A stretch of 64,000 nt of DNA from Laetmonice hystrix (GCA_965235115.1 OZ249445.1:15190001-15254000); one strand, 5' to 3'. Positions 14,301 through 54,303 are shown, counted from the first letter of the stretch. Numbers and translations: made by a program. The notes: a model not told the origin generated them from the letters alone.

Positions 14301-17300
14301 GAATATTTAATTTAACAATCATTGAAGGGCCAGGGACTAAAGTGATTTCTTCATGCAATCTCCTTTTCAACTTCGAAAAAAAAAGTTCCGTGTGCTAGCC
14401 GTAGGCAGTGAGTAATTGCTAGAACAGCAGCGTAAGAACAAAGCTTGCCTGATGAGGAAGAATGAGCAGTGGATGTTATTATTGGGGTGTACGGGTCGTT
14501 ACAGGAGGCGGTGGGCTGGGATCCTCACCGTCATGGGAGGCAGTGGACTGGGATCCTCACCATCATGGGAGGCGGCGGGCTGGGATCTGACCGTCATGGG
14601 AGGCGGTGGGCTGGGATCCTCACCGTCATGGGAGGCGGTGGGCTGGGATCCTCACCGTCATGGGAGGTGGTGGACTGGGATCCTCACCGTCATGGGAGGC
14701 GGTGGGCTGGGATCCTCACCGTCATGGGAGGCGGTGGGCTGGGATCCTCACCGTCATGGGAGGCGGTGGACTGGGATCCTCAGTCATGCGAGGCGGTGGG
14801 CTGGAATCCTCACCGTCATGGGAGGCGGTGGGCTGGGACCCTCACCGTCATGGGAGGCGGTGGACTGGGATCCTCACCGTCATGGTAGGGGGTGGGCTGG
14901 GACCCTCACCGTCATGGGAGGCGGTGGGCTGGGATCCTCACCGTCATGGGAGGCGGTGGGCTGGGATCCTCACCGTGATGGAAGGCGGTGGGCTGGGATC
15001 CTCACCGTGATGGGAGGCGGTGGACTGGGATCCTCACCGTGATGGGAGGCGGTGGGCTGGGATCATCATCCTGGTCCAGGTTAGGCCATGGCTGGACCGT
15101 TAATTGGGGACCTGAGTGGTGAGTCTGAGCTGATGTCGGGGTTGGAGCCTGACTGGCTGAATACCTCTGCCCACACACCCTCAGGCTAAGGACAGTTAAT
15201 CCACTGTCGCCTCCATAATGGATGAGTGGAGTGGTGGGGAGAAGTTTGCAGATTACCCCAGGGGTAGGGCCAAGATGGGTGCCGAGTGCACGAATGTCCA
15301 ACACTTGTTCACCCATTCTCTTTCTACTGCTTTCATCCCAAAACCTGCCCGAATCTCTGCCTGCATCGTGTTCCGAGAACCGGCGTCGTTGGAATGAAAT
15401 GGAACCAAGAATGAATAGAAAATGGAGGACCCCGAGATAATTCACAACAGTGGGTTAAAACTTGTTATGGGGTAAACCCTACAGGATGGGTACTGGAATA
15501 GATGAACCTATTCCTATGTAAAATGTCGGTAGCCGTGAGTAGTATATGAGATGTGAGTGTTAGTGCTGGTAGTTATGACGAGAACTTTGCCAGGATTGTC
15601 AGGGTGAGGCCTGGCCGTCACTGAGTACGTACGTGTAACGTTCTCGACGGTAATGGACAAACTGACCGGAATGGAGGATGGCCAGTTAATGCCAAGATGG
15701 ATGTTGTCATTGATAGACTGGATATACCTTGAATTACCCCTGCCGGCCCCGACAGGAGCTTCTATCAATAATATAGGGGGTAATTATATTCCGCCAGTCG
15801 GAGACGTTAGTCACAGTGGTTTCAGTTGTTGGGTAGAACTATATTGTGCCCTAGCCTGGAGAAGGTAATTGTGTGTGTGTGTGCTGTGTTAGAATGGAAG
15901 TATGTACTGGTGTAAGATAGAAGCAGCCCCACCCCCCCCCCCCGCCGGCCTCCGACTTTACCGCGGTTATACCGTACGTCATCAGGCCTCAGGGTCTCTC
16001 ACCATATTGACGACGTTCATGGGACGTCATACCAGAGTGTGCACTTATTGCACATGTCGTCCATACCGCCTCCTGTCTAACCTCACACCCAGAGCACCCA
16101 TCTGTCACCTCCTGTCTCAGCCATCTGTCACCTCCTGTCTCAGCCTACCATCTGTACCACTCAACTGTCCCCCACCGTCCGCGGAGACTTGCCGCCTTTC
16201 TCCGTATTGCCTGCTATATTGTTTTATCCCCCTACCTACTCCCTGTAATATTGCTTGCTGATGAGAATATGTTACAGTGGCAGCCGTCCCAAGTGATACA
16301 TCGTAATGAAAGCTGCAGCTGTAGCTTTTCAAAATATCATTAATCTCCTCGACGTGGCCAGGGAGACTTTTCTTGACATATCCGATAATCTCAGCTTGTT
16401 TGTCGTTAATCCTGTGATTATTGTGTCTCTCGCTGCAGATCATCCTCCAGTCGCGAGATTACAATGCGCTGTCGATGAGCGTGATGGCCTTCGTGGCCAT
16501 GCTCTATCCACTCGAGTATATGTTCCCCGTCATTCCACTGCTGCCTACCTGTATGTCATCTGCTGAACAGGTACCTCCTTTTTATCATCCCACTCAACAA
16601 TCTGCAAATCGCTTATAATTGAATTCCATACATCAGTATAAGAGATTAATTTCATTTTAAGGCCAAAATATACTTATCTTGGGACAGATTATATTTTGAA
16701 TGGTTGATGAATTTGTTAATTCTGTCAAAACTTTGGAACGGGCCGTATTGTGTGTATTGGTCTTGAGTTTTACAACTGGTTATGTTTTTTCACAATAATG
16801 ATTCCTTACCAGAAAGATTAGAAAAGTGCCGTACTAACTGTAGAGTAGTAAATTGGCTTGAGTTTTCCGAAGAAGTAAGTCTGAGAGTGTGGTCAATATT
16901 TGATTGCAGTTGTTGCTGGCTCCGACGCCGTTCATCATCGGAATCCCGTCCAGCTTCCTCATGTACAAACAGAACTTCAGATTGCCCGACGATGTCTGGC
17001 TTGTTGACCTGGATTCCAACAGGGTGAGTGACTGCCCACTGTTGTCGGACGGAAAACCTAGATGGAACATTGATGAACTGAATTGATTACAAAATGAAGA
17101 GTGGTTTTCTAAACAGTTTAAGCTTATTTTTATTTATTTTATTACGAAAGTAAGTACTGGTGAGTCACTTTTGGATCTGAGGTGATCTTGTAACCGTTTT
17201 GCTGAAACGTAACCAGTTTATGGATGATTTTTTTTTTTATACTATCTCAGTTACTAAGTCCGGGACGGTGGGACCAGCATCGTGCAATTAACCAGGCTCA

Positions 17301-41300: not shown

Positions 41301-44300
41301 TTTTCAGTCTCATTGTGTAGAGAAAACTTTTCAAGATAAAATTGGCTTTTATCTAAACATATTTTGTAAGGAGAATAATACCAATTTATTGAAACATAGT
41401 GTCTAATTTGGTTTTGTTTGACAAGATTGCCCAGATCATGAAATCTTTGTAAGACCTGACCGTGTTGTTGCACAGATGATGGCGTACGGGCGTAAGAAAC
41501 GTTCGGGGAGCATTATGAGTGTAAAAAGTCATGTCAGCCAAGGTTATCGCTACACGGAGGGTCGTGTTGCAAACACCAACCTACCCAGCCCCGAAACCAA
41601 CAGAACATACGTCTTTGAAGCACTAATAGGTTGGTAACACCACTCAGCCACAGTTATTCTTTCCTATGTTTCTGTTGTTTCTCACTGAAAACGGAATCAA
41701 GATGAGCCAGTGTTTATTTGTAAGAGCCAGTGCTAGTGCTCTGTTTGTCGTGGTTTGCCACTGATAGTTTGGTTATTGCAGGCAAGGAGCGGTCGTGGTT
41801 GTGGGACCAGATGCAGTTCTGGGAGGATGCCTTCCTTGACGCAGTGGCCCAGGAACGAGATATCATCGGCATGGACCAGGGTCCCACTGAGATGATGGAG
41901 AGGTACATCTCTTACTATGTTCATCCTACTCAAATTACTTTCTGTGGAAAGGCAAAATAAATCAAATTCATGGGTGTTTTCAACAAATAACTGAAGTTTA
42001 CGTATTGTTGGTTCCTGGTTGCCTTGATGTTGTCATGATGTTAGCTCAGTGATGATTGGAAGGATGTTTGGAAACATGGGACTGGATCTATACTTTCACT
42101 GCCGATAGGTACAACTCGTTAGGGGATCCAGAGAAAAAGCGTTTAGAACATGACGAAGATCGACTCCTTGCGATTCTGCTCTACAACATGATCGCCTTCA
42201 TGATCATGATGCGTGTCAGTAAGAACGAGATCCGCCGCAAAGTGCGCCGTCTACTGGGCAAGTGCCACATCGGCCTCGGCTACAGCCAGGAAGTTAATAA
42301 CGTCCTGGACCAGATCAATAACCTGGCAAGTAAAAACCTAGTAACTAGTTCTTCTAATCGTGTCGTATTATCTTAAATAACTTTAATTATTGTGAATTTC
42401 AGACAAAAAGATGCTTTCATATAGTTTTATTGTGATTATTCCGGATCAAATATCATCAAGTTAAATATATGTTCATATATTTGCAATATTTGTATAGAAA
42501 TTCTCCAAAAATGCGGAAAGCATAAGTGTGTTGAGGTTGTGAAATGTCATAGGGCAAATCCATTTGCTTCTAGACCCATACAAGTTTCACTATTCAGACT
42601 TTTGTTTAATACAAATTTTAGAATACCCAAATCCTTTGTAAGCTGTGCAAGAAATATAAAGAATTGAAACCTCGGGGAATATTTGTTAGTTTGACATCAG
42701 ATGTATTGACACGTGTCAAACGTTGTTGAATGTACGAGTCCTAGGGCCATACCTAATAGGGTCGCCTTTAATTTATTTCACCTTTTTGCCAATTTTTCCT
42801 AGGGTCTGGAAGCAAAGGTGAGTTGTCAGGCTTAGGCTGGTTTCCAATCAGAAATCCTTTCTTCATTACATTGTACCAGTTCACGCCAAGGCGAATGAAA
42901 TTAGATGGTCTAGTGTGTCACAGACACGGGACATTTGTACAAATAAAATGATTTTCATATGTAAGGGAGTAGAAATGAGACATTGAAATGGGCAAAGAAC
43001 GTCGTTGAATAATCTTGCCATTGGTGACCTTTCTCTGGTGTTCGCAAATTATCAATCTTTAGGTCAGGTAAAGTATTTCCCAGTCGGTCAAATTTACTCC
43101 GATGGAACTATACTGGGGGGTTTTATTTTATCAGAAAGTTTTTTTTCAAAACATATAAACTAGAACATTTTTGTGTTTATTTATATTTTCATCCTAGCAT
43201 GTTGCGTTTTCCATATGTCTATACATGTTTTATTTAATGAATGTTTTTCCGTATAATTGGTGTGAGTGTATCATGTACTAATCTACTCTGCTCTTGTACA
43301 TATAGTTACTACTTGATACCTTGAGTGGTGGATACAGGTTGTTTGTACATGAGGTAATGGTGGGTCAATCTGTTGACAGCACGGTAACGACATTGACCTG
43401 AAGCCACTTGGTAGCCGCATGATGCAGAAACAGTCTTTCACGGTTCACTGGGGGCCTGACAACACTGGTGACATGCTCTTTATGGAGGTCAGTACTAGCG
43501 TGTAGGTCAGGGCAACAAGTAACACAAGTCTTTCAATCATTTCCATATTCGATATGTTAGAGTCATTCAAGAACGATTTTTTGGTGCCAATATTACTGTT
43601 GTGCCAGTATAAGATATCACACAGATATTGTTTTGTAATATCTTTTGGTCGGGTGTTCCTCATCATGTCGTTAGCTTGTCGTGCGTTAAAGTCCCCATTG
43701 AAAATACATTGGCGTTAACGATACGACAAGCTAACGACATGATGAGGAACACCCCCCAGTATTGTCATGCGGGAGTGGAGTCTAGCAGAAGTCATGCAAG
43801 CTTTCAGTGAAGTCCACCATTTTCCCAGCAGGCCTGACAATGGTAATGATGTATTGTGCCTGTTTCAATCAGAGATTTACGACTGAATGTTGCAGGTGTG
43901 TGATGATTGCATCATCCTGCGCAGTGTTACAGGCTCTATTTGTGATCGATGGTGGTATGAGAAACTAGTCAACATGACCTACTGCCCCAAGACCAAGGTC
44001 CTCTGCTTGTGGCGGCGACACGATGGCAAGACTCAGCTCAACAAATTCTATACAAAAAAGGCAAGTCAAGGTCGCATTGAAATAGGACAGATTGAAATAA
44101 ACATAACATCTAGAGTCGTTCTTTGAAACGTTACGTATTGTCATGTGTTTGAAGTTTGTTACTGCCGTGTGTCTGTAACAGCCCTTAGTAAGACGGGTTT
44201 TAACCAGCTCTAGTTAATAACGATTTCTGGTTATTAACTAGCTATAAGTTAACTAGATCGGGCTTAACGATGTTTAGTAAGACGGGCCCCTGAGGTATGA

Positions 44301-47300
44301 TTCTGTCTGTTGCAGTGTAAGGAACTCTACCTGTGTGTGAAGGACTCCATGGAGAAGGCGGCGGCCAGGAACAATGGCAAAGTTCCAGGTAGGACACAGT
44401 GGTGGAGGTCTTCTCCTGCTCAGGGGGGAAGCTCTCAGACGGTGCTGCCGTCTGGAGGCCAGCACGCGAACCAACCCACCCGTGCTGTTCACTCAGTAGT
44501 CAGAACTAGTTTTGAAAAGAGAGATCTGCTTGTTCGTGTTGACAGATCGAAACCAGTAGAGCTTGTAGTGCAGCGCTAAATGAGTAAAAAACATTGTTCC
44601 TAGTGTATGGAAGATGGGAGTAAGTTTGTATAAAAGGGTATTTATATTTGATAATAGTGTTAATGTTCTTCCCTGGATTGATTCATGTGTATCCTCAGTG
44701 TATGGTTAAGTATTATGAGGTGTACTAAACAAGGTAATATCTAGCTGATGATTTCTGCTGATGGTTAGCTGTTAAACTCTGTCAGACTGGTCCAGACATG
44801 ATTATTAACTATAATTTTTAGCATTGCTTTTGGCAAGACCTGACCTCTCTCCAAAGAACAAATCAGTAACTTTTTAATAGATAATATTAATAATGAAAAG
44901 AAAGAGAAATTAAAATTGACATTCACTGATGCTATGAGTCATTCATTGTAGGGGGGGGAGATGCTTTTGCTGAAGGTGCTTGGTGAAAATGTCTTGTGTC
45001 AACCTGTTTTTATTTGTCGCTATTGACTACCGTTGAATCCCTTAGTGATCACTTCCTGTTGGTAGGCATGGCAACCAGTTTGGTGCTCGGTGACTAGTAA
45101 TGAGCCAGACCAGGGGAGAAACTTTTACAGCAGTCTTTACATTTTAAATTCCCGGGTATTGTTCTTACTGGCATTAAAGGACTTGAGCGAAAGGGGCAAC
45201 ATTTACGGTAGAAGATCCCTGTCACTACATTGTTTTGGCTGTACTTTGGCGGAATCCTGAGGTGTAAGTTACTATGTCAGAGGGAGAGAAGATTGTAGGT
45301 GGGGTTCGGGGTTCGGGCTGTGTTACCCCCTGTAGGCTGTCTCATTCCTAGCCCACCAGGCGGCGTATGTTGTTGTATGATGACTAAGTGTTGGTGTTTG
45401 CCCAGGCCCTGAGTTGGGTGGGGAATTTCCTGTTCAGGATATGCGGACCGGGCAGGGCGGCCTGCTGCAGGTCTGCATGGAGGGAATCGGACTGCTCTTC
45501 GCAAACAGCAAGGTGAGTAGCTGTGACCTTGACCTAATTTGTCATGACCTGGTTATATTTTTTTTGCCGACTCGAGTTGACCTAGTTAGTCAGGGCATGA
45601 GGTGAGGGTCACCGTTAGATATGAACAGGATTGCTGCTTAGGCCAAATGTAGGTAGATAGGTAGGAAAGTGACTCTTACCTGTAGGTGTTACATACGTGT
45701 AAAGAACTTCGTTTGAAAATATTTAACTTTTACAGTAAGACATGTTGAGTGTAAATATTTCTAAAGTATTGGTACCAACAAGGCCTGCCAGTAGTGGTAC
45801 ATGTTGTATATATATATATATGTATAGACATCAAAACATTTGGAGATCATATAAAGTATTAAAGGTTCTGCTATATTCTAGCCTAGAAGCCCTGCCCTAA
45901 GATTGGCGTGACCACTCCCATGTGTTTGTGACCTGTAGAGAGTGTAGGTGTCCATGTGGTAGACTGCAGCCCGTGGCCATGTAGAATTTGGAGAAGGGTT
46001 GTAAATATGGGGCACTAAGACAGGTGGCTAATACCTTACCTGCTCCAAATTCACATTTTCATGTGCTACTAGGTCAAGTCTGAAGGACTCCAGAAATATG
46101 AAAACAAAATTCAAATATTCAAAGAAAATAAATGCACAAATACACAATAAATCGCTACTTAAAGTCTTAAAGAGTAAAGACATGCTGCTGAAGCTTAAAT
46201 GTAGAATTATATGAATTGTTGACTCAATGGTAATGACCCCGTGACAATCTGTAAATTGATAGTCGTTCGTCTACAGCATCCTATAACTGATATGCCCACA
46301 TCCAAATTGTGCATTCTTATTCTGAAATCTCTGCTGAAATCCATGGTGTCATATTTTATTCGGAAATCCATGTGCTCATATCCATAATGTCATATGTTAA
46401 TTCGGAAATCTCTATGCTTACGTCTATGACACTATGGTTTTATTCTGAAATCAATATACCTGCAACTATGATGTCATGTTATTCGGAAATCCATATGCCC
46501 ATGCCTATACTTCCACACAATATGCTAGTTGATATTCCGTAAATCCATGCCCACATCCATACCAAGTTGTATGTGAAAAGTGCGCGGAGACTCAACCTGT
46601 TGGACAGAAACACGCAAAGACATGAACAGAAACACAAAACGTGATTTAACCAACATGTAGATGTAGATGAAGCCACCCAGAGAGGAACTAGCAACATTTA
46701 GCGTGGTGCACACAGCCACACCCCCACAGTAGACACCCACAGAGCTGCACCTGTAGCGGCTGAGGTAGTTGCACTTACGACCTGTTTAGGAATGATGTAC
46801 TGGCTCGTGGCTGTCACTTCATAAACTCCTGTACTGCACACCATCTGCTCTTCTTACCTGGGTGTGTCGTCATTCTTCTCCCCCCTTCCCAGCTGCTGCA
46901 ACAGCTGCCCAGCAGTTGCTGCCAATGGGAGTGCAGACAATGGCTGGAACAGGCACTATAGCCGCAGAATTTGGAGTATATTTCTTAATTTAGAAAGAAA
47001 AGAAAAATTGCACGAAATCCAAAATATTTGGCCCTAAATTTATTATCATTGTTTTGTTTTGTTTTTGAATCCCTACAAAATAAAGAGGGGTTAGGTTAGT
47101 GAACTGCGTGCTGCCACCAAGCCAAGCCACTGTGTGCGCCCTGCGCCATTCCTACCCTTACCCATCTCTTTGTTTGCCTCTAAACTTGTACAAGTCTCTC
47201 TGAGCTCAGCTCTGCTCCAATGTGTTCCCTACACAGCTGCCCCCTCCGTAAGGACACGGTAAAAAAAACATCAAGGCTTGGACCTTGCTGTCCTACTGTC

Positions 47301-50300
47301 TCACATTCTGCCCACCTTGGTCACACCACCAATCACGCCTAGTGATCGTATAGATGCACCCAACACTGAAACCCCCACCACATGCATGCCTTGTCAGTAT
47401 CCACTGCAGCCCTGCAGATCCAAGATGGCTGCATGTGAGTGAGCACAGCCCCAAGAGGAGTGAGGTTCAGCCAGTGTGGTTGGCTGTGTCCATACATATC
47501 GTCGTTGTGTTAACTGTTGTGCTGGTGACGTGTGGAGGTGTCATCAAGTTGGATATTTTGCAGTGTCTAGCTGTGGTAGTGTAAGTAGCAGAGGTTGTAC
47601 ATTAGGGTAGACACAACACCGATGCCGACAATTGATGAACATAGTGGTACATCGAGATTCAGGCAGCACGAATAAAGGACATGGAAAGTGGCAGACCCTC
47701 TCAAAGCTCTATTCCAGCCCAACGAAGCACAACGTCCAAACCAAAACTGGATTCCGATCGCTTCCGCAATGGGTGAAATTTTTACTTGAATCTATTTTTC
47801 CATTTTTGATATTAACCTTCCCCCCTTTTCCAATCGGTAATATGTTCTCCCATTTCTGGTCCCTCCACACCTCTTTATCCAATCCTCTTGATTTTTCATA
47901 CCTCCCTATTCAGACTTTAAAACGGAAATTGAAATTTTTCAAAGCGACAAAAGCTATCAAGGATTTTACCCTAATTTTTGTGCTGTATCAGTTTGCATTC
48001 AAGCAAGCCTCTGTTCTGATTGCGACAAAAAAGAACAAACTGGAAAAAAAAATCGAGTTCAACCCCCGCCATTTGCATGGCTTGGACCTTGTCATCTGAA
48101 AATTGCATGGCATCAGTGACAAGCCAATCAGAAAAGAGGAAGGCATTTACCTGCACGAATGAGCTGACGCGGCTGGTTTTGTGTTGTGTGGGAACTTTTG
48201 AGATGGTCTCACTTTCTGCTGCTGTTGACGGGCAGGGACAGTGTCCAAGAGTCAAGTGTCCAAAAACCAAAACAACAAATGGCAAAACCTAGAAGTCTCA
48301 AATGCTAAAACTGACCTTTTCTCTTTTCTACATGCATCGCTTCTGCGGATGGGTTCAGGACTTTGAGGTACGGGTGGCTTTTATACATGGTTGGATGCAC
48401 TTGTGCATTGAGTGATGAATAGACGTATACCTACATCGGTAGTGGCCATCTCATAAGTTCAATTTGGTTGTGCTCATTATTTTGCATGCGATTGGATGTC
48501 ATGTACTGCCATGTTTGTGTTGCTCTGAAATTCGCACACTCGACCATTGCAACCACTTGTGTTGAGCCGGACCGTACGTCGCCCCTGTATCTCATACAGC
48601 GCCCTGGAGTGGCCGTTTGTGGCGACATCTCGGGGCTGTCACGTCTTGCGTACCCTCTCCGGGGTGTCGGTCAAAACCTTCATGTGTCAAGCCCAGTGGC
48701 GGGCGTCTCTACACTGAGGGCAATAGCACGGAGTCACTCCGACGGAAAGAGAATAGAAAAAGGAAAAAATAAAAACGGTGTTCAAAAAGTGTAAACCTCA
48801 CTCGACACTGGATACGACATGATGGTGGGGGCCGGCACGGTGCTTGCCACGTGTATGCACCCCAGTGTTGTTACCTCCATATGTATACATCGAGATATAT
48901 ACGTGTACATACAGTCGCTGTTGTCAATGTCGGAATCTGTGCAGCTTGATATGACCTTTGACCAGCTCCACGTGTCTTGACCATCGACCTGTAACCTTTC
49001 TCTACGTTTAGCGCGCCTTTCCGCACCGACCCTCTTTTTCTGCATTGTGCTTTCCACCCGCCCCCTAGTGTTCACCTGAAGGACCAGACAGCAAGCCTGA
49101 TAGTTCACAATAACAGCGTCATGAGATATTCAAAGGTCTGGCACCAGCCAATCAGAGATGTTCAGAGTTGGCACCAGCCAATCAGAGACGAGATTATAGT
49201 TTGTACTTACATATGACACAAGTGGTGATGCTTGCCTAGTTTTAGTGTGTCCACCTTTCTGATTGGTTGCTGACTCCTTCATTTTTGATGTTTCAGTTCT
49301 TTATTGAGCTAAGTCGTATCAAGAAATGTTTCACCATGAAAGGCGGCATATTTGTACTAGAGGAATTTGGTAAGACCACTGTAGCACTTTTTTGGTTCCT
49401 CTTTACCTCCTCGTAGTTCTGCTTTTGACTTTGGTTTCCTGTACACACATTTGATCATGGATTGAGGCCAGTGGGAATGTGATATTGTGTTCACGTAGCA
49501 TGTCGAATGACGGTGCACATGCTTCCCTGCTGTGCTTGTATATATATTATATACATGTATCGAGTGTCTTTCAATATGATGGTCTGTACATGTGTGTATG
49601 TGTACCTCATGGCCCAAGGTTGAGTTTGCGGCATGAGAACATTTACAGCCTTCGTGCGTGGGTGTGGGCGCGTGCGCGTGTGGGTGTGCGTGGGTGCCAG
49701 TGTCGCTACAGTCCTCAATGGCCAAACCTTTCCTTATTGCTCCTGACTGGATATCAGACTTTAGACAGAATAAAGCGGAATCTCATCAGGTTTTCCATGA
49801 GAGATAACACGACATGCTGCAATATCCGTCAAGTTATATCCAGACAGAGAGAGAGGAATTCATTGGTCATTGATGGAAAGAGTGACACGCGACTGTACAC
49901 GTGACGCGGGGAGACCCGGCCACCTGGTGGTGATAAACAGAACTAACCCTAAGGTTGGCGTCTTTGGTTAAGATAACCCCCTAGCAATAATAACCTTCCT
50001 AAAGGATCAAGAGACGTAGAAGAAAATTAAGCCTTAATAAATTCACTTCACTGAACCTGATCTGTGTAGATTGGTTTTTACTGCTCAGGTTAGTAATATA
50101 GAACATTAACAACAACAAAAGTCGTGTATCAGACGTTGATATGTGATATGATATTCCGTCAGACCAGGATTGACTCAACTTAGACTAAAGGATTTCTAAA
50201 TTACTCCCACGTAACATTGCTGCTAAATTCCATTTCATCTTAAACTCTAACTTTATATCACCTAATTAGAAGTGGAAAAAACGTACCATTCCTAAAACCC

Positions 50301-53293
50301 AGTGAAGTTGGAAGTTAAGTGCATGTGGCTTTGTTGAACCTTTCCAAGTTGTTGGTTTATCTCTCAATTAATGAAAGCCTACGTTGGTTTGGTTTTGGCA
50401 GATTTTGACTTAAAAGCAACCTGTTTGTGAGTTACTTGTAGCGCCAAATTCCCTGGACTGTCGTGACATCGTTTTTGCTTACACTATGATTGGCTTCTAG
50501 TTAAGTAAACGTTTTTTCAAAACGTTTAAAACGGACATCTCCAAGACATCTTATCTCATCAGTTGTAACGGCTTATAACCAGAAATGCATGGTAATTGGT
50601 AGTGGTTTCAACTCAAGCAAATGTCAAATTCCGGTAGGAGTTGAAATTATTATTTAGATCCTAGAAATATACAAATCGTCTCTCCTATAACAATTATACA
50701 CAGTATTATAGAGTCTCGAACTATACATGTATTTTAATTGTAAGAAAAGAAAGAAAGCTTCTGTGACCAATTGCCACGAACATTTGACCTTTAACCCCAA
50801 AGCATGCAATCTTTGACCTTTGTGAGAAGTTCTTGCATGATGTTGGTGTCATTTACTCAGGGTAAATTGTTTCACTACGTTCATAAAGAAAATTTACATG
50901 TTGAATTTGCAGATCCCAAAACTCGGAAAATAGTTCAGAGGAAGTACAAATCAAACATGGTAAGTCTTTACAAAACTTCATTGATTAAGATCTACGAGAG
51001 ATTTTAAGGAATCCCATTATTTTGTGGTGTGAATATTGTGACTGCTGAACAAATTGCAATTTAGGAAAGCGTGTCTAACAACGACAAGGAGACAGGGGTT
51101 GGAGGGCCGGGGGTTGGGAGATAGTGCACAGACCTGCCAGCCTTGTATGAAACAATTTGTTACGATGTACGATACTTTTTCCGTGCTTTGGAATTACGAA
51201 GTTGTCAGATCTGATGGAGAGAGCTGCTATATCTCATATCGTAATTCTCATTCACCGGTTGTTTGACCCGTTTTCCTATTTATGCCTTTAATTTTCTATT
51301 AGTGGTTGTTGTGTTGAAAAGGCGTGGTTTCATGCTAGTGTCCAAATAACTTCAATCCATGTTTTGTTTCACCTGGAAACTCGTAATATTTGGTAATCCC
51401 AAGATCCTCCCTTTTTTAGTAGGTTATCAGAACATTGTTTTCATGCAGTTTGGTTAAACGTTTTGGTATAGCATGACGAACGGTGCCACTTCGTTCTGCC
51501 TTGTATTAGGCTGTAAAACGAATCCTTAAAGGAATGGAACCGGGGTTACTGTCCTAGCCCCTTTATCTGGCAATTAGTCTTAAGACAAATCTGAAGATAT
51601 CCTATTCTTATCTCATATATATCAGTATGAAATTCAATCCTCCAAAACTGCATGCAAGAACATGTTCTTGAAAGACTATTACCCTATCATTTATTTGCAT
51701 TGTTTACCAAATTTTGTTTATCCCTGCATGCTGTAGGCCAATCAGCTAGTCCTGGCTATGCATAGAATCATTGCCATCAAGGTGCAACAAACGATGGCCT
51801 TCAAACTTGACGCCATAGCCAATCAGAGTGAAGGGAAAGGTTCTGTTGGAGAAGCCGGTCACTATGGAAACGGCACGGAAGGTTCACCATCCAACGAATC
51901 GAGTGACACGGAAACTGTGACGTCAGACTGGGACACCATCAGCCTGAGTCCACACAGCCCAGGCGAAAGTGACGTCACAGAAACCGACAGCCAACTGGAA
52001 GCCGACCCGGACAGAGTGGGTCTGGACTCGTGTCCAACAAATAACAATTTTTACAAGGACCCCGGTTACAGTGACGGAGAGCGGGCGTCGTCTGAGCCAG
52101 GCCCAATGTCCAATCAGATCGGTGACAAAAACGACGACTCTGATGAGCCGACACCAGACGGTGCACGTGCCCAGAAGGGGGCGCTGTTAAACGGCGTGTT
52201 GCAGGTCTGTGGAGAGGCGGGAGACATGAGCGGAGGTAGCTCGCTGAGGGTTGGAGACCTTCCCACTGCTGCCACCAACCACCACCACCAACCCTGATCC
52301 CGTGAGCTACATCTAAACAGCTCTTCGACCTCCTCTCAGCTCAACTCACACTCTCGCATGTGGCATCTCGCTGACTTATTAAGACCTCCTCTCCTTTTTT
52401 AACCGGTAGATTGCGTTAACCTGCATGTTGTGTTTTCAGCTTTATTGTGATATTACTACATTATTTGCATTTGTATTAACAGTGAAAAGACTTTGAGCTT
52501 GTTCCCTTTCAGAACATTTTCTACTGGCAAAGGTTTGCAGTTTGGCACTGGTTATAAATAACTTATTACTATACTGACGATGTATTGGTGTGGTATTGTA
52601 CAGCTTCTGAAAGCCATGTCTAATCTCTAACATTCAGTGGAGAAACTAACAAGACAAAACGGTTTCATTTACTTATCAACCGGGGTATGGTGCTAATTGT
52701 GGTCAGCGGTCGATATCATCTCGTCAGGCCCTACTAGTCATTTTTATAGATTAGTATCGCTATGAAATTACACAAGTTCGATGATCTGGAGATAGGCCTG
52801 TATAGGGATATCTAAGATTTAGAAGGCTGACTTAATAGTGTTTGTGCGTGAGAGCGGTTGTAAGCTTAAGATCAGCATCTTGCATTAAACTTGGTATTCG
52901 TATATTTTGCATAGATTCTGAAGAATAGGTGAATCTTTAAGAATGTAAAAAGGCATGTTTACTACTTAACGAAGGAAACTTTCTCTCTGACCAACACCAT
53001 CAGATGGGCCTACAGTATGACCTCTTTGATGTGTAATAGATACTTGGATAAGGTCACAACGAAATCCTGCAAATTCGCTCTTGAAACGTGAAATAATAAA
53101 TGGTTGCCTGCAGTAGCGGAGCTGGAGGTGTCAGTGTGACCCATGAATGTGACCTGTCTATGTTTGTGTGTTTCAGGCTGACCAGATCTGTTACGCGGTG
53201 CTCTGCGTTTTCTCCTACGTGGCAGCCGGGATGGAGGCCCGCCAAAAGTTGTTAGAGGCGGCGCAGCGTGCCAACGTCTCCAAGACGCTATAG
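2257..53293 (+). CDS. MADD: MAP kinase-activating death domain protein / Rab3 GDP-GTP exchange factor (DENN domain), 5'-partial spliced gene, 29 core coding exons in window
   Basis: Exon peptides match hallmark MADD/AEX-3 motifs in the correct order ([107 protein letters not shown]). All intron phases join; summed length is 4642 nt = 1 + 1547 codons. Confidence 0.97.
2783..2941 (+). CDS. MADD: MADD core exon w2 (cDENN)
   Basis: ttgtag|...AAG|gttagt; [53 protein letters not shown]. Confidence 0.96.
7194..7791. repeat. Minisatellite, 52-bp unit, about 11 copies, one internally deleted
   Basis: Unit ccagagatagtatattgagtatgcctcgagtggcagtcgtggggagacctga; the copy near 7553 is shortened via AG microhomology. 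Confidence 0.96.
8310..8500 (+). promoter_or_regulatory. Candidate internal promoter: YY1-type motifs plus TATA box
   Basis: ggccgccatttt near 8310, tataaaa near 8471, aatggcggc near 8487; CpG-containing patch inside an AT-rich intron. Confidence 0.35.
8571..8642 (+). CDS. Candidate alternative first coding exon ([24 protein letters not shown]), phase 0 to w3
   Basis: Two in-frame ATGs (8571, 8598), AGG|gtaaaa donor, TATAAAA about 100 nt upstream. Confidence 0.3.
10031..10078. repeat. 12-bp tandem repeat (agagaagtgttg) x4
   Basis: Visible in sequence. Confidence 0.9.
10198..10717. repeat. 104-bp tandem repeat x5, nearly identical copies
   Basis: atctctatgtcg recurs at 10201, 10305, 10409, 10513, 10617. 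Confidence 0.96.
14504..15064. repeat. G-rich minisatellite, 32-bp unit (gggatcctcaccgtcatgggaggcggtgggct), about 17 copies
   Basis: Directly visible tandem copies. Confidence 0.96.
16439..16570 (+). CDS. MADD: MADD core exon w3 (cDENN)
   Basis: ctgcag|...CAG|gtacct; [44 protein letters not shown]. Confidence 0.96.
16910..17023 (+). CDS. MADD: MADD core exon w4 (cDENN)
   Basis: ttgcag|...AGG|gtgagt; [38 protein letters not shown]. Confidence 0.96.
17251..17571 (+). CDS. MADD: Putative MADD cassette exon encoding (AQ)n and polyQ, 107 aa, phase 0-0
   Basis: T-rich tract then ctcag|; donor GGG|gtatgt; 321 nt, open in the MADD frame; mixed CAA/CAG and GCT/GCC codons. Confidence 0.7.
19537..19667. 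repeat. 42-bp tandem repeat x3
   Basis: gaatatagcgtacgatatgcctgtgttatctcggtgtattag repeated. Confidence 0.95.
21048..21173. mobile_element. Short MITE-like element with GGCCC-type termini and internal perfect hairpin
   Basis: ggccccgggttttagtttg / caaactaaaaaccgggccc termini; tcagtcttaagatt-ca-aatcttaagactga at 21075-21104. Confidence 0.55.
22676..22750 (+). CDS. MADD: MADD core exon w5
   Basis: aactag|...CAG|gttagt; [25 protein letters not shown], matching the family LPEPE...LKKHLKQ segment. Confidence 0.92.
23040..23349. repeat. Minisatellite, 29-bp unit (gagagatattgcctggggatattgttact), about 10.5 copies
   Basis: Directly visible tandem copies. Confidence 0.96.
23887..23928 (+). CDS. MADD: Putative 42-nt MADD cassette exon ([14 protein letters not shown])
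   Basis: CTAAT branch point, tttctttcag| acceptor, CAG|gtataa donor, phase 0-0, no stop. Confidence 0.45.
24938..24950 (+). promoter_or_regulatory. CTCF-like motif
   Basis: ccaccaggtggcg. Confidence 0.4.
25010..25063 (+). CDS. MADD: Putative 54-nt MADD cassette exon ([18 protein letters not shown])
   Basis: cttgtag| acceptor, TCA|gtaagt donor, phase 0-0, no stop. Confidence 0.45.
26637..26807 (+). CDS. MADD: MADD core exon w6 (dDENN start)
   Basis: ttctag|...ATG|gtaagc; [16 protein letters not shown]...[21 protein letters not shown]. Confidence 0.96.
26830..27032. mobile_element. MITE-like element, about 203 bp, about 52-bp terminal inverted repeats
   Basis: Left aagtgctgaacccaccaaggtgattccccttgcgacgcccatgcgattttga; right end is its reverse complement with few mismatches; no ORF. 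Confidence 0.8.
27211..27369 (+). CDS. MADD: MADD core exon w7 (dDENN)
   Basis: tatcag|...CAG|gtaagt; [31 protein letters not shown]...KLARTQ. Confidence 0.96.
28530..28752 (+). CDS. MADD: MADD core exon w8
   Basis: ttacag|...ACA G|gtgggc; [14 protein letters not shown]...[12 protein letters not shown]. Confidence 0.95.
28905..29005. other. 101-bp intronic fold-back (hairpin) element
   Basis: About 45-bp arms, attctacc...tcgcgagacg..agagcatgtgagatac / gtatctaacatgctctc..cgtctcgcga...ggtagaat, 10-nt loop. Confidence 0.8.
29075..29185 (+). CDS. MADD: MADD core exon w9 (Ser/acidic)
   Basis: tttcag|...CCA G|gtacag; [37 protein letters not shown]. Confidence 0.94.
29985..30202 (+). CDS. MADD: MADD exon w10 (acidic low complexity)
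   Basis: tttcag|...AAG|gtaagc; phase 1-0, open frame EVYCEDHM...PPRPPPGK. Confidence 0.85.
30448..30662 (+). CDS. MADD: MADD exon w11 (FRYD-repeat segment)
   Basis: aatcag|...AG|gtgggt; phase 0-2, open frame AEGDHFRYD...PEVTK. Confidence 0.8.
30850..31180 (+). CDS. MADD: MADD exon w12 (proline-rich)
   Basis: tttcag|...AAG|gttagt; phase 2-0 joins w11; [16 protein letters not shown]...GVGISK. Confidence 0.82.
31198..31384. repeat. Minisatellite, 23-bp unit (tcctttacctggtatggacaatc) x8
   Basis: Starts 18 nt after the w12 donor. Confidence 0.96.
31514..31619 (+). CDS. MADD: MADD exon w13
   Basis: tttcag|...TTC G|gtaggt; [35 protein letters not shown]. Confidence 0.8.
32259..32297 (+). CDS. 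MADD: Putative 39-nt MADD cassette microexon ([13 protein letters not shown])
   Basis: ttacttacag| acceptor, CGG|gtaaga donor, phase 1-1 matching the host intron. Confidence 0.5.
32422..32435. promoter_or_regulatory. RFX X-box motif (one of about 8 in MADD introns)
   Basis: gttaccatagcaac; others at 2117, 4339, 20636, 22755, 27854, 34100, 37597. Confidence 0.5.
35702..35770 (+). CDS. MADD: MADD exon w14
   Basis: tttcag|...CTT G|gtatgt; [23 protein letters not shown], preceding the conserved GNRKALV. Confidence 0.8.
36366..36474 (+). CDS. MADD: MADD core exon w15
   Basis: ctgcag|...AG|gtagag; [15 protein letters not shown], matching family GNRRALVDQKSSVIKH. Confidence 0.93.
36667..36853 (+). 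CDS. MADD: MADD core exon w16
   Basis: ttgcag|...GTG|gtaggc; [22 protein letters not shown]. Confidence 0.95.
37062..37256 (+). CDS. MADD: MADD core exon w17
   Basis: ttacag|...ATG|gtcagt; VFKGIV...[28 protein letters not shown]. Confidence 0.95.
37481..37586 (+). CDS. MADD: MADD exon w18
   Basis: tgacag|...GTA G|gtgcgt; [13 protein letters not shown]...AETRSLHEE, echoing family DTRSLKEE; a second GT 4 nt upstream would break frame. Confidence 0.82.
38814..38924 (+). CDS. MADD: Putative 111-nt MADD cassette exon with NAGNAG acceptor and GC donor
   Basis: cag|tag| tandem acceptor; CAG|gcaagt donor; phase 1-1; [37 protein letters not shown]. Confidence 0.6.
39564..40201 (+). CDS. MADD: MADD exon w19 (large low-complexity exon)
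   Basis: ctccag|...GGG|gtaagg; inside ORF 39545-40276; ends [14 protein letters not shown], echoing family RGTLSDSEIE. Confidence 0.88.
41476..41629 (+). CDS. MADD: MADD exon w20
   Basis: gcacag|...ATA G|gttggt; ends [10 protein letters not shown], matching family QRVYLYEGLL. Confidence 0.9.
41782..41902 (+). CDS. MADD: MADD core exon w21
   Basis: ttgcag|...AG|gtacat; [34 protein letters not shown]. Confidence 0.96.
42109..42325 (+). CDS. MADD: MADD core exon w22 (so-called death-domain region), GC donor
   Basis: cgatag|...CTG|gcaagt; [22 protein letters not shown]...[12 protein letters not shown]...DQINNL. Confidence 0.94.
43380..43487 (+). CDS. MADD: MADD core exon w23
   Basis: tgacag|...GAG|gtcagt; [36 protein letters not shown]. 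Confidence 0.94.
43651..43754. mobile_element. Palindromic MITE-like element, copy 1
   Basis: About 40-bp arms gggtgttcctcatcatgtcgttagcttgtcgt / acgacaagctaacgacatgatgaggaacaccc; related copy at 59787-59902. Confidence 0.8.
43896..44060 (+). CDS. MADD: MADD core exon w24, GC donor
   Basis: ttgcag|...AAG|gcaagt; [10 protein letters not shown]...[24 protein letters not shown]...NKFYTKK. Confidence 0.95.
44316..44388 (+). CDS. MADD: MADD core exon w25
   Basis: ttgcag|...CCA G|gtagga; [18 protein letters not shown]. Confidence 0.95.
45406..45512 (+). CDS. MADD: MADD core exon w26
   Basis: gcccag|...AAG|gtgagt; [36 protein letters not shown]. Confidence 0.95.
47237..47257 (+). CDS. MADD: Putative 21-nt MADD microexon (LPLRKDT)
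   Basis: ttccctacacag| acceptor, ACG|gtaaaa donor, phase 0-0, upstream TGC and pyrimidine tract. Confidence 0.5.
48359..48367 (+). CDS. MADD: Putative 9-nt MADD microexon (DFE)
   Basis: CTGAC branch point, ctttttctcttttct tract, TGC motifs, ttcag|GACTTTGAG|gtacgg; phase 0-0. Confidence 0.65.
49297..49369 (+). CDS. MADD: MADD core exon w27
   Basis: tttcag|...TTT G|gtaaga; [24 protein letters not shown]. Confidence 0.94.
50913..50959 (+). CDS. MADD: MADD core exon w28
   Basis: ttgcag|...ATG|gtaagt; [16 protein letters not shown], matching family VVSHKYKTPM. Confidence 0.92.
51737..52297 (+). CDS. MADD: Putative alternative last coding exon of MADD (186 aa plus stop)
   Basis: ctgtag| phase-0 acceptor 21 nt upstream of ORF 51758-52297; begins [12 protein letters not shown], paralleling [12 protein letters not shown]. 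Confidence 0.7.
   Translation, partial: ANQLVLAMHRIIAIKVQQTMAFKLDAIANQSEGKGSVGEAGHYGNGTEGSPSNESSDTETVTSDWDTISLSPHSPGESDVTETDSQLEADPDRVGLDSCPTNNNFYKDPGYSDGERASSEPGPMSNQIGDKNDDSDEPTPDGARAQKGALLNGVLQVCGEAGDMSGGSSLRVGDLPTAATNHHHQP
53177..53293 (+). CDS. MADD: MADD canonical last coding exon w29 (ends TAG)
   Basis: tttcag|; [18 protein letters not shown]...KTL*, matching family AHEICYSVLCLFSYVAA. Confidence 0.94.
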   Translation, partial: ADQICYAVLCVFSYVAAGMEARQKLLEAAQRANVSKTL

Positions 53294-54303
53294 CAAATGG
53301 TCTCCGGTGGCGACACCTCTGGGCAAACCAGCAAACTAAAACCAGACGCCACTGGTGTCGCCACCGGTCGCAACCTGCCGAGACCATCGTCTGTTCACAT
53401 GCACAAACTGCCTTCCACACTTGAAACCTTACTGATCAAAAACACGATGAAACGAATCAGACACGACAAATTGTGAAACGAAGTTTTAACATAACGGCCA
53501 AATAGTCAGACTTCGAACTTGTTTACCTTAAAAAGGGGTTTACTGTAGAGAGTGATTGCATATATATAAAAAAAACCTACACCATGGACTTACTGCTAGA
53601 CAGACCAGGTATGTTCATATTATACTCGGAACGTGAGGAACTTTGTCCTCAGTGGTCGGGTATATTGAACGTACCTACAAGACCTTACCCAAGTGCATGC
53701 GAAAATTTTTATAAGAAGTAGAATGTCATTTCCACCACTCTATCCTTCACATTGCGCATGAAAAAATGCCCCTGTGACGTTTTTCCCCCTCCCTTATAAA
53801 AAAAAAAATCCCACAAAATGAGATCATTGCCCTATGCAGAATTTTTGTTTTTCATATTTCAAGTAGCTGATATCGTCCCGGCACAGGCAGCGTCCTGCAG
53901 TTCGTACGGACCCTTGGGTAATGCCTGTCAAGGCTGTCATTGTTGTCAAATGAGGGGTATTTATTACGTGAAACGATCTGTAACCTTAACATGGTGCTAA
54001 ATGACAGAGTTGTGCTAGGTAAGAATATGGACATATATGGTTTAAGGTATAGTGCTGTGGAGGTTTAGGGACACGTGCATGTGCGTACAGATCTAGATAT
54101 GTATCTATATATTGCAGAACCTGAGCTGTTGTGTGCGTTGTTCTGTGAATAGAGTCCTTTTGTTCCACGTGCGCATTTGGTTACGTCACGTTATCGTTTG
54201 TCTGTTTGCAAGTTTTTATGTCATTTTTTTTTATTTATTAATGTGCATTCCATCACCTGCGTTTGTGAACTTTAATTTGGGTGAGCAACAAGCCCAACTC
54301 TTT

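What the first reader, a model, noticed from the sequence alone, without database searches (positions are those of the whole stretch)
51737..53293. Duplicated, mutually exclusive last exons give MADD two C-termini
Seen: after KYKSNM there are two phase-0 acceptors. One starts [16 protein letters not shown] and runs 186 aa into an acidic Ser-rich tail ending HHHQP*. The other is canonical [16 protein letters not shown] (38 aa). Both share A-x-Q-[LI]-x-x-A-[MV]-x-x-[IV]-hydrophobic, and each has its own stop. The upstream acceptor carries TGC motifs (ctgcatgctgtag). Inference: exon duplication swaps the terminal helix and adds a long disordered tail, selected by alternative splicing/polyadenylation.
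Basis: partly seen in the sequence, partly recalled or inferred. Interest (0 to 1): 0.7.

Follow-up and report, generated by a model that had tools for sequence, protein, structure and literature searches.

The report
Conserved alternative last exon of MADD
In a marine worm's gene for MADD, the protein that switches on the synaptic-vesicle GTPase Rab3, the last intron hides a second, evolutionarily conserved final coding exon that would replace the protein's last helix and add a long acidic floppy tail; no RNA data were available to show when it is used.

Summary
After the 47-nt exon ending KYKSNM (50913-50959) there are two phase-0 acceptors: 51737, opening a 186-codon frame with its own TGA (52295-52297), and 53177, the canonical 38-codon last exon.

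The upstream frame is a real coding exon, not a chance ORF:
- It is a GC island (0.56 against 0.39 in the flanks).
- Polymorphisms in three DNA runs are 6 synonymous to 5 non-synonymous, and the only indel is +3.
- A 195-aa homologue lies downstream of the MADD PH exon in another species.
- The same intron holds an AG-preceded, phase-0 ORF with its own stop and the motif A-x-x-h-h-x-x-[MLV]-H-R-[IV]-[IF]-[AS] in three further, deeply separated species. It is 198 aa in one, 35 aa in another and 25 aa in the third.

Its first 16 residues resemble the canonical exon's more than column permutations allow (P = 3e-4). The Pfam PH_MADD profile aligns into it. AlphaFold gives a helix (2-30) plus disorder. 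Sense-strand TGCATG (the Rbfox site) is enriched in this intron across species (10 found, 1.7 expected).

No RNA runs exist for this genome, so junction use, tissue and 3'-end architecture remain untested. Mammalian MADD has a known neuronal alternative exon 34; I could not test homology to it. I class this as a new member of a known kind.

The parts
45405..45515 (+). Constitutive exon encoding the start of the MADD C-terminal PH-like domain ([36 protein letters not shown]; approximate limits)
   Evidence: Pfam PF25328 profile 1-37, 64.2 bits. It is 84-97% identical in other species' loci.
49297..49369 (+). Constitutive exon (F)[23 protein letters not shown] plus the first base of a split codon, followed by the donor G|gtaaga
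   Evidence: Pfam PF25328 profile 32-60, 40.1 bits. The sequence and the join to the next exon are shown.
50913..50959 (+). 47-nt constitutive exon (D)[15 protein letters not shown]. It ends in phase 0 before gtaagt and is the shared donor for both terminal exons.
   Evidence: Pfam profile 61-76. Homologous exons in L003, L008, L009, L012 and L014.
51712..51736 (+). 3' splice site region of the alternative exon: pyrimidine-rich tract, TGCATG at 51725-51730, then ctgtag
   Evidence: L008 has tttttgcatggatag at the same place.
51737..52297 (+). Alternative last coding exon: 186 codons plus TGA. Residues 1-30 are predicted helical and residues 31-186 form an acidic Ser/Thr-rich disordered tail. 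How far the exon extends 3' is unknown.
   Evidence: - Open frame.
- GC 0.556 against 0.385 and 0.396 in the flanks.
- 6 synonymous to 5 non-synonymous SNPs, and only a +3 indel.
- Homologue P0001.
- Related exons in L003, L008 and L012.
- AlphaFold helix 2-30.
- Tail pI 4.1.
52298..53176 (+). Sequence between the alternative stop and the canonical acceptor. It is either the 3' UTR of the alternative exon, or intron, or both. It holds a GTGAGC donor-like site at 52302, TGCATG at 52422, ATTAAA at 52884 and AATAAA at 53095.
   Evidence: No SNP falls in 52298-52563 in the three DNA runs.
53177..53293 (+). Canonical last coding exon [18 protein letters not shown]..., 38 codons plus TAG. It supplies the last helix of the PH_MADD domain.
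   Evidence: Pfam profile 77-92 when joined to the 47-nt exon, 37.6 bits. The first 14-31 residues are 54-93% identical in all other loci.

Best explanation
Window 51737-52297 is a genuine, evolutionarily old alternative last coding exon of the MADD/Rab3-GEP gene.

Splicing the donor at 50959 to the acceptor at 51737 instead of 53177 would keep the whole protein up to KYKSNM. It would replace the final alpha-helix of the C-terminal PH-like domain (canonical [16 protein letters not shown]) with a related but distinct helix ([16 protein letters not shown]...). The hydrophobic positions 4-6, 8, 11 and 12 are kept. The invariant Leu-Cys at positions 9-10 becomes a conserved His-Arg. In this annelid lineage the exon also appends about 155 residues of acidic, Ser/Thr-rich disordered tail. 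Because the exon carries its own stop codon, the two C-termini exclude each other at the protein level.

Inferred, not shown:
- The exon most likely arose as a tandem duplicate of the last exon.
- Its use is probably controlled by Rbfox-type factors that bind the (U)GCAUG elements clustered in this intron, which would make it a neuron-enriched isoform.
- It probably changes what the C-terminal module of the Rab3 exchange factor binds, or how it is held inactive.
For: Shown in this locus:
- Acceptor, phase, open frame and own stop.
- A GC island that coincides with the ORF.
- Population data from three DNA runs: 6 synonymous to 5 non-synonymous SNPs. P = 0.02 for that many synonymous changes, and pN/pS is about 0.25. 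The only indel is +3, while the flanks carry -1, +1 and -5.

Shown in other species:
- The only hit among 1.84 billion representative proteins is P0001, 195 aa, 45-50% identical, with conserved blocks MHRxIAIxVQQxMAxKLD and SNExSDTxTVxSxWDTISLS.
- P0001 lies 6.5 kb downstream, on the same strand, of a MADD PH-exon ORF whose exon part differs at 1 of 36 residues.
- The homologous intron of L003 holds a 198-codon ORF that starts right after tatag (AGVIALSLHRVISC...; P(open) about 3e-6). L008 and L007 hold a 35-codon exon (ASDAVRCMHRVFSVAL...). L012 holds a 25-codon exon (ANELALAVHRVISVRL..., 9 of 16 residues identical to the window).
- L012 is the best non-self phmmer hit (E = 0.038) among 14,790 six-frame segments. 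A three-sequence HMM ranks the L008 and L003 exons next.

Helix slot:
- The 47-nt exon joined to the alternative exon aligns to PF25328 profile positions 61-89 at 20.7 bits. Joined to the canonical exon it aligns to 61-92 at 37.6 bits.
- AlphaFold2 gives a helix at 2-30 with pLDDT about 77, and the rest is below 50.

Duplicate origin:
- The mean anchored BLOSUM score of alternative against canonical exon is 9.8, against -10.4 +/- 5.5 for column permutations. P = 3e-4, or 1.5e-3 without position 1.

Regulation:
- Sense-strand TGCATG occurs 10 times against 1.66 expected in this intron over five species (P = 1e-5). It occurs 0 times in L014, which lacks the exon.
- There are 13 sense-strand copies in window 47.0-54.1 kb.
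Against: - There is no transcript evidence at all. No RNA run holds this locus, the runs laid were DNA, and a degenerate spliced-junction pattern found nothing in JGI contigs.
- SNP density in the ORF (11 in 561 nt) is not lower than in the flanking intron, so constraint on the tail is weak.
- The tail is not alignable with L003 beyond composition. It is absent in the species with 25-35 codon exons, so the long tail is lineage-specific.
- L014, a relative of L012, has the intron but no recognisable exon. L004/L005 and L010/L011 have no intron there.
- The L009 candidate is statistically weak (E = 140).
- The L012 acceptor follows an A-run rather than a pyrimidine tract.
- The gain from the Pfam profile over the shared exon is only about 6 bits. 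Similarity to the canonical helix could reflect shared structural constraint rather than duplication.
Confidence: 0.78

Rival explanations
1. The exon is real and conserved but is not a duplicate of the canonical last exon. It arose independently, for example by exonisation of intron sequence, and resembles the canonical helix only because both must pack against the same PH-like beta-sandwich.
For: Within one species only 3-6 of 16 residues are identical. The shared positions are mostly hydrophobic helix-face positions plus Ala1, which the G after the AG favours. The Pfam profile gains only about 6 bits. Exon lengths differ greatly in the annelid, 186 against 38 codons.
Against: The similarity is anchored, ungapped and in register from the first codon in five species (P = 3e-4, and 1.5e-3 without position 1). 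It includes non-hydrophobic positions: N/D at 2, Q at 3 and S at 13. In the species with short exons the two exons are similar in length, 25-35 against 30-66 codons. Both exons lie in tandem in the same phase.
Confidence: 0.3
2. The exon is not an alternative terminal exon with its own polyadenylation site. It may be a stop-containing cassette exon, with a donor shortly after the stop and the canonical exon becoming 3' UTR. Or it may simply be the product of an upstream alternative 3' splice site of one long last exon that uses the canonical poly(A) site.
For: No poly(A) signal is conserved after the stop. L003, L008 and L009 have none between the stop and the canonical acceptor, and the introns are only 283-727 nt in L008, L009 and L012. 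Donor-like sites follow the stop in the window (GTGAGC at 52302, 4 nt after the TGA) and in L009 (GTAAGA, 21 nt after the stop). Human MADD exon 34 is listed among the alternatively spliced exons, and a study reports its increased inclusion (PMC12603207, PMC13756106).
Against: The window has ATTAAA at 52884 and AATAAA at 53095, and L012 has AATAAA about 100 nt after its stop. Donor candidates score poorly or are absent in L003, L008 and L012. Nothing discriminates between the models without RNA 3' ends.
Confidence: 0.45
3. The ORF is a separate small gene nested in the MADD intron. It would be translated from the ATG at 51758 (codon 8) and would not be part of MADD.
For: A gene caller called it that way in the window and in the other species (179 and 195 aa). 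Met8 is shared by the window, P0001 and L008.
Against: Conservation extends upstream of Met8 to the AG: ANQLVLA in the window against ANELALA in L012. L003 and L012 have Leu or Val instead of Met at that position. The frame opens exactly at the acceptor in every species, in the phase left by the upstream exon. No promoter-like evidence was found.
Confidence: 0.04
4. The ORF is a chance or decaying intronic ORF with no function.
For: There is no RNA evidence. SNP density is as high as in the intron. The exon is absent in L014.
Against: ORFs of 186, 195+ and 198 codons are kept in three species whose neutral sequence is no longer alignable (P(open) 1e-6 to 1e-3 each). The peptide motif is conserved in five species. 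The ORF is a GC island. Synonymous changes are in excess.
Confidence: 0.04

Closest known systems
Mammalian MADD/IG20 alternative exon 34 (isoforms KIAA0358 and IG20-SV4)
   Same: It is in the same gene and also near the 3' end of the coding region. Exon 34 is one of the alternatively spliced exons. The isoforms named KIAA0358 and IG20-SV4 are reported only in neuronal and neuroendocrine tissues, and KIAA0358 is the orthologue of rat Rab3 GEP (PMC12603207, PMC3994957). Inclusion of exon 34 changes on loss of a splicing factor in neural cells (PMC13756106). From my own memory, not checked here: exon 34 carries a stop and gives a different, shorter C-terminus.
   Different: I could not obtain the vertebrate exon or its position. 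It is untested whether it lies in the intron after the KYKTPM-type exon, whether it encodes an A-x-x-h-h-x-x-x-H-R-type helix, and whether it is homologous. No long acidic tail is reported for it.
Tandem-duplicated, mutually exclusive alternative exons (for example SNAP-25 exons 5a/5b; general knowledge)
   Same: Two neighbouring exons in the same phase encode alternative versions of the same structural element in a presynaptic protein. Their sequence similarity is in register.
   Different: Here both are terminal exons with their own stops, so exclusivity follows from the stop codon rather than from splicing rules. Lengths differ five-fold in the annelid. Similarity is weak, 3-6 of 16 residues.
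Rbfox-regulated neuronal exons ((U)GCAUG RNA map; general knowledge)
   Same: There is strong strand-specific enrichment of TGCATG in the regulated intron in several species, including copies directly before the acceptor in the annelid and in L008.
   Different: Binding and regulation are untested. Motif positions are not conserved in all species. A site directly upstream of an exon usually represses it, so the direction of regulation is unknown.
Drosophila Rab3-GEF long C-terminus
   Same: The fly orthologue is described as having about 300 extra residues at its C-terminal end after the death domain (PMC4791486). This shows that long low-complexity C-terminal extensions are tolerated in this protein family. 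The canonical last exon of L008 has a poly-Gln tail and that of L009 a Pro-rich tail.
   Different: In L008 and L009 the extension is on the canonical ADQICY-type exon, not on the alternative exon. I did not have the fly sequence to compare.

Membership tests
MADD/Rab3-GEP gene (host gene) | Death_MADD and PH_MADD domains encoded by collinear exons on one strand | tested here: met
   PF23629 at 116.7 bits (42056-42373). PF25328 at 64.2 and 40.1 bits (45384-45602 and 49246-49413), with profile positions 61-92 completed by 50913-50959 plus 53177 onwards.
Alternative last coding exon | AG acceptor in the phase left by the upstream constitutive donor, an open frame and an own stop codon | tested here: met
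   The same holds in L003, L008 and L012.
Alternative last coding exon | Own cleavage and polyadenylation site upstream of the canonical last exon | tested here: inconclusive
   The window has ATTAAA at 52884 and AATAAA at 53095. No such signal lies after the stop in L003, L008 or L009.
Alternative last coding exon | Transcripts that join the upstream donor to the alternative acceptor | not testable with these tools
   No RNA run holds the locus. The laid runs are genomic DNA. The junction pattern is absent from JGI contigs.
Protein-coding exon under selection | Frame, peptide and position conserved in other species | tested here: met
   P0001. L003, L008/L007 and L012 lie in the homologous intron. 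Exceptions: L014 lacks the exon, and L004 and L010 lack the intron.
Protein-coding exon under selection | Excess of synonymous over non-synonymous polymorphism, and only frame-preserving indels | tested here: met
   6 synonymous to 5 non-synonymous SNPs on 127 and 431 sites, P = 0.02. The only indel is +3. The numbers are small.
Tandem duplicated alternative exons | Sequence homology between the two exons, in register | tested here: inconclusive
   The anchored score is above column permutations at P = 3e-4, and the Pfam profile extends to position 89. Only 3-6 of 16 residues are identical, so convergence is not excluded.
Tandem duplicated alternative exons | Similar exon length | tested here: not met
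   186 against 38 codons in the window and 198 against 38 in L003. Lengths are comparable in L008 (35 against 66) and L012 (25 against 30).
PH_MADD (PF25328) C-terminal helix | Match to profile positions 77-92 and helical conformation | tested here: inconclusive
   The joined 39-mer aligns to 61-89 at 20.7 bits, below the 27-bit family cut-off. The canonical 39-mer scores 37.6 bits. A helix is predicted at 2-30.
Rbfox-regulated exon | Enrichment of (U)GCAUG on the sense strand near the exon, conserved across species | tested here: met
   10 found against 1.66 expected over five species, P = 1e-5. There are 13 sense-strand copies in 47.0-54.1 kb of the window.
Rbfox-regulated exon | Binding by Rbfox and Rbfox-dependent inclusion | not testable with these tools
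   This needs CLIP, knock-down or minigene experiments.
Homologue of mammalian MADD exon 34 | Same intron position and related peptide | not tested
The papers held give no sequence.

The most novel reading that the evidence does not exclude
Protostome MADD genes, and possibly bilaterian ones generally, carry an ancient pair of duplicated last exons that act as a switch on the C-terminal PH-like domain. The canonical helix (Leu-Cys at positions 9-10) is exchanged for a His-Arg helix under Rbfox control in neurons. This would change autoinhibition or partner binding (Rab3-GTP, kinesin-3) of the Rab3/Rab27 exchange factor. Annelid-type lineages have added an acidic, phosphorylatable tail to this switch. 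If mammalian exon 34 is the same exon, the neuronal MADD isoform would be over 500 million years old.
Probability: 0.3. Interest if true: 0.65.

Novelty: new member of a known kind. Interest (0 to 1): 0.5.

Why it matters
MADD/Rab3-GEP is the non-redundant activator of Rab3 and Rab27 in regulated secretion. It is also an adaptor for kinesin-3 transport of synaptic-vesicle precursors, and its C-terminal region is needed for activity and partner binding (PMC11141940). A conserved isoform that rewrites only the last helix of the C-terminal PH-like domain points to a specific regulatory surface that can be tested. It also offers a handle for asking what the poorly understood neuronal C-terminal isoforms of mammalian MADD do. 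For genome annotation it shows that this exon, which gene finders treat as an orphan ORF, belongs to MADD.

Tried and rejected
- RNA evidence: the look-up of sequencing runs returned only three runs of one sample, none recorded as RNA. Laying them showed continuous genomic contigs with no splice joints. They were useful only for polymorphisms.
- A degenerate 45-nt spliced-junction pattern covering both the annelid and the L012 lineages found nothing in JGI contigs.
- The search for related loci with the alignment of the two long exons found no relative in JGI contigs.
- Word-seeded protein searches with the exon found nothing, and with its alignment found only P0001.
- PDB sequence searches with either exon gave only spurious armadillo-repeat designs or nothing.
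- The ESM Atlas gave no usable hit.
- Pfam on either exon alone gave nothing.
- The bacterial promoter/terminator scan is irrelevant to an animal gene and is discarded.
- DNA of the P0001 contig and of the P0054 contigs could not be fetched because the files were too large.
- L002, L006 and L013 end before the relevant intron.
- The idea that SDWDTI is a conserved LC3-interacting or adaptor motif was dropped as a claim. The Trp is kept in P0001 but not in L003.
- The in-frame stretch upstream of 50913 ([17 protein letters not shown]) was considered as part of the exon and rejected. The Pfam register and the phase-1 join to the ...EEF exon place the acceptor at 50912/50913.
- The papers that first described human exon 34 (PMC2760438, PMC2679454) are not held.
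- Searches for Rab3-GEF or Madd together with 'alternative last exon' gave nothing relevant.
- Folding the spliced PH-like domain with either helix was not attempted.

Full report
**What is in the sequence.**
The window carries the 3' half of a MADD/Rab3-GEP gene on the + strand. By other agents' notes in this scan the genome is an annelid's; I did not verify that. The window has no N.
- Pfam places the death domain at 42056-42373 (PF23629, 116.7 bits).
- The C-terminal PH-like domain (PF25328) is spread over exons at about 45405-45515 (profile 1-37) and about 49297-49369 (profile 32-60).
- It continues in the 47-nt exon 50913-50959, (D)[15 protein letters not shown] (profile 61-76).
- That exon ends in phase 0 before gtaagt.
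- Downstream there are two acceptors in phase 0. The first is ctgcatgctgtag|GCC at 51737 and the second is tttcag|GCT at 53177.
- The first opens 186 codons ([16 protein letters not shown] ... HHHQP) to TGA at 52295-52297.
- The second opens the canonical 38 codons ([18 protein letters not shown]...) to TAG at 53291-53293.

**Is the upstream frame coding?**
Several independent lines say yes.
- Composition: the ORF has GC 0.556, against 0.385 and 0.396 in the flanking intron and 0.598 in the canonical exon. The rise and fall coincide with the ORF.
- Length: 186 open codons has P about 6e-6 at intron composition and 7e-4 at the ORF's own composition.
- Polymorphism: the three public runs that hold the locus are genomic DNA of one sample.
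  - They show 11 SNPs in the ORF, 6 synonymous and 5 non-synonymous, on 127 and 431 sites.
  - That gives pN/pS of about 0.25 and a binomial P of 0.02.
  - The only indel in the ORF is +3 bases, whereas the flanking intron carries -3, -1, +1 and -5 indels and a 3-to-36-base replacement.
  - These numbers are small, and SNP density in the ORF is not reduced. Constraint on most of the tail is therefore weak.
- Homology: an exhaustive HMMER search of 1.84 billion representative proteins gave exactly one hit.
  - The hit is P0001, 195 aa, E = 2.5e-8, 45-50% identical.
  - It has near-invariant blocks MHRxIAIxVQQxMAxKLD and SNExSDTxTVxSxWDTISLS between unalignable stretches, and its stop is at a similar distance.
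  - P0001 sits on a 400-kb ENA contig, 6.5 kb downstream and on the same strand as an ORF with a PH_MADD hit.
  - That ORF (P0002) differs from the window's exon at 1 of 36 residues. Similarity fades about 10 codons into the intron.
  - So this is a related species in which neutral sequence has diverged while the ORF has been kept.

**The same exon in other animals.**
I used ORFs homologous to the PH exon to fetch MADD 3' ends from unannotated contigs. I then mapped the constitutive exons with tblastn.
- L003: the 1296-nt intron between ...RKYKSNM and ADQICYAV... holds a 198-codon ORF that begins directly after tatag.
  - It reads AGVIALSLHRVISC... and is followed by an acidic Ser-rich tail.
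  - P(open) is about 3e-6.
- L008 and L007: the 727-nt intron holds ASDAVRCMHRVFSVAL..., 35 codons and a stop, after tttttgcatggatag.
- L012: the 371-nt intron holds ANELALAVHRVISVRLSLKYNKESL and a stop. Nine of its first 16 residues are identical to the window.
- Statistics against all 14,790 six-frame segments of every locus and the window:
  - The window's first 30 residues find L012 as the best non-self hit (E = 0.038) and L008 next.
  - An HMM of window, P0001 and L012 ranks the L008 and L003 exons first (E = 0.69 and 1.5 database-wide).
  - Scaled to the homologous intron alone, by my own arithmetic, these become about 1e-3 and 4e-3.
- L009: a 26-codon candidate (ANQILLHHLRIFSKCM...) starts after an AG in a 283-nt intron, but it is statistically weak.
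- L014, a relative of L012, has the intron but no such exon.
- L004/L005 and L010/L011 have no intron at this site.
- L008, L009 and L012 differ from the window in intron structure, because the exon before the GPELGG exon is fused to it there. I take that, plus lower identity of the constitutive exons, to mean they belong to clades well separated from the annelid. Their taxa are not known to me.
- Conservation extends upstream of the only Met (codon 8) to the AG, and L003 and L012 lack that Met. This rules out a nested gene that starts at the ATG.

**Relation to the canonical exon, and structure.**
- The consensus of the alternative exon is A-x-x-[ILA]-[VLA]-x-x-[MLV]-H-R-[IV]-[IF]-[AS]. The canonical exon is A-D-Q-I-C-Y-[AS]-V-L-C-V-F-S-Y.
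- Aligned from the first codon without gaps, the mean BLOSUM62 score between the two sets over five species is 9.8. Column permutations give -10.4 +/- 5.5. P is 3e-4, or 1.5e-3 if position 1 is left out.
- Hydrophobic positions 4-6, 8, 11 and 12 are shared. Positions 9-10 are invariantly Leu-Cys in canonical exons and His-Arg in four of the five alternative exons compared (Leu-Arg in the weak L009 candidate).
- The 47-nt exon joined to the alternative exon aligns to PF25328 positions 61-89 at 20.7 bits. Joined to the canonical exon it aligns to 61-92 at 37.6 bits. The shared exon region scored 15 bits.
- AlphaFold2 on the exon alone, with a three-sequence alignment, predicts one helix at residues 2-30 (pLDDT about 77) and disorder after it.
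- The tail has 29 Asp+Glu, 8 Lys+Arg and 32 Ser+Thr in 156 residues, with pI 4.1. The figures are similar in P0001 and L003.
- So the exon would swap the last helix of the PH-like domain and add an acidic disordered tail. The tail is long only in the window, P0001 and L003.
- Duplication is the simplest origin. Convergence on the same structural slot is not excluded.

**Regulation (inferred).**
- TGCATG, the Rbfox site, lies at -12 to -7 of the alternative acceptor in the window and at -10 to -5 in L008.
- Over the homologous intron of five species there are 10 sense-strand copies against 1.66 expected (P = 1e-5). L014, which lacks the exon, has none.
- In the window, 13 sense-strand copies lie in 47.0-54.1 kb, which also contains two microexons noted by others. 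I estimate about 2.4 expected there from the window-wide shuffles.
- This fits neuron-enriched regulation. It is motif evidence only.

**What stays open.**
- No RNA data could be had, so use of the junction, tissue specificity and the 3' end are untested.
- Poly(A) signals (52884 and 53095 in the window) and donors after the stop (GTGAGC at 52302 in the window, GTAAGA in L009) are not conserved between species.
- Three models remain: a separate terminal exon, a stop-containing cassette, and an upstream alternative 3' splice site of one long last exon.

**Comparison with what is known.**
- Mammalian MADG/IG20 is in fact MADD/IG20: it is spliced alternatively at exons 13, 16, 21, 26 and 34. The isoforms KIAA0358 (the Rab3 GEP orthologue) and IG20-SV4 are confined to neuronal and neuroendocrine tissue (PMC12603207, PMC3994957). 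Exon 34 inclusion responds to a splicing factor (PMC13756106).
- That is the closest known case. I could not obtain its sequence or position, so homology is untested.
- I found no paper that describes this exon in invertebrates. Automated isoform annotations may already contain it.

**Verdict.**
- This is a real, conserved alternative C-terminal exon of MADD, and I class it as a new member of a known kind.
- Confidence is about 0.8 that it is a functional coding exon and about 0.55 that it is a duplicate of the last exon.
- The 3'-end mechanism and the tissue of use are open.

Noticed in passing
window 47000-54100, + strand: Thirteen sense-strand TGCATG copies lie in 7.1 kb, against about 0.34 per kb expected and 6 on the antisense strand. 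They span the two reported microexons and the alternative last exon. The whole 3' end of the gene looks like an Rbfox-type regulated splicing region.
   Followed up: partly
window 50861-50912: The frame of the 47-nt exon stays open for 17 more codons upstream ([17 protein letters not shown]), back to another AG at 50860. The Pfam register and the phase-1 join argue that this stretch is intron. An alternative upstream acceptor was not excluded.
   Followed up: partly
window 52727-52731 and 52277: Allelic variants appear in the three DNA runs. At 52727-52731, 3 bases are replaced by 36 in the intron. At 52277 an ACC is inserted in the CAC/CAA run that encodes the His-rich C-terminal end.
   Followed up: no
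window 52298-52563: No SNP falls in the 266 nt directly after the alternative stop in any of the three runs, although the ORF and the rest of the intron carry 1-2% differences. This may be a constrained 3' UTR or regulatory stretch. It includes TGCATG at 52422.
   Followed up: no
L012:13867-14090: In this species the canonical last exon is split by an extra intron after ...AVLCVF. The remainder, SYVAAGSEQR..., follows about 130 nt later.
   Followed up: no
L004:6212-10000, L010:4090-7914: Two compact genomes encode most of MADD as a single 1262-1274 codon open frame. They have no intron between the KYKSNM-type and ADQICY-type segments, so no alternative last exon is possible there.
   Followed up: partly
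L008:16482-16679 and L009:11881-12288: The canonical last exons carry long low-complexity tails, poly-Gln in L008 and Pro-rich (136 codons) in L009. C-terminal extension of MADD has therefore happened repeatedly and on either exon.
   Followed up: no
window 415-870 and 14416-15040: Long open frames made of tandem repeats, with units such as GWD(H/R)HGQT(W/R)GDWLD and [31 protein letters not shown]. They are probably satellite or minisatellite DNA in introns.
   Followed up: no
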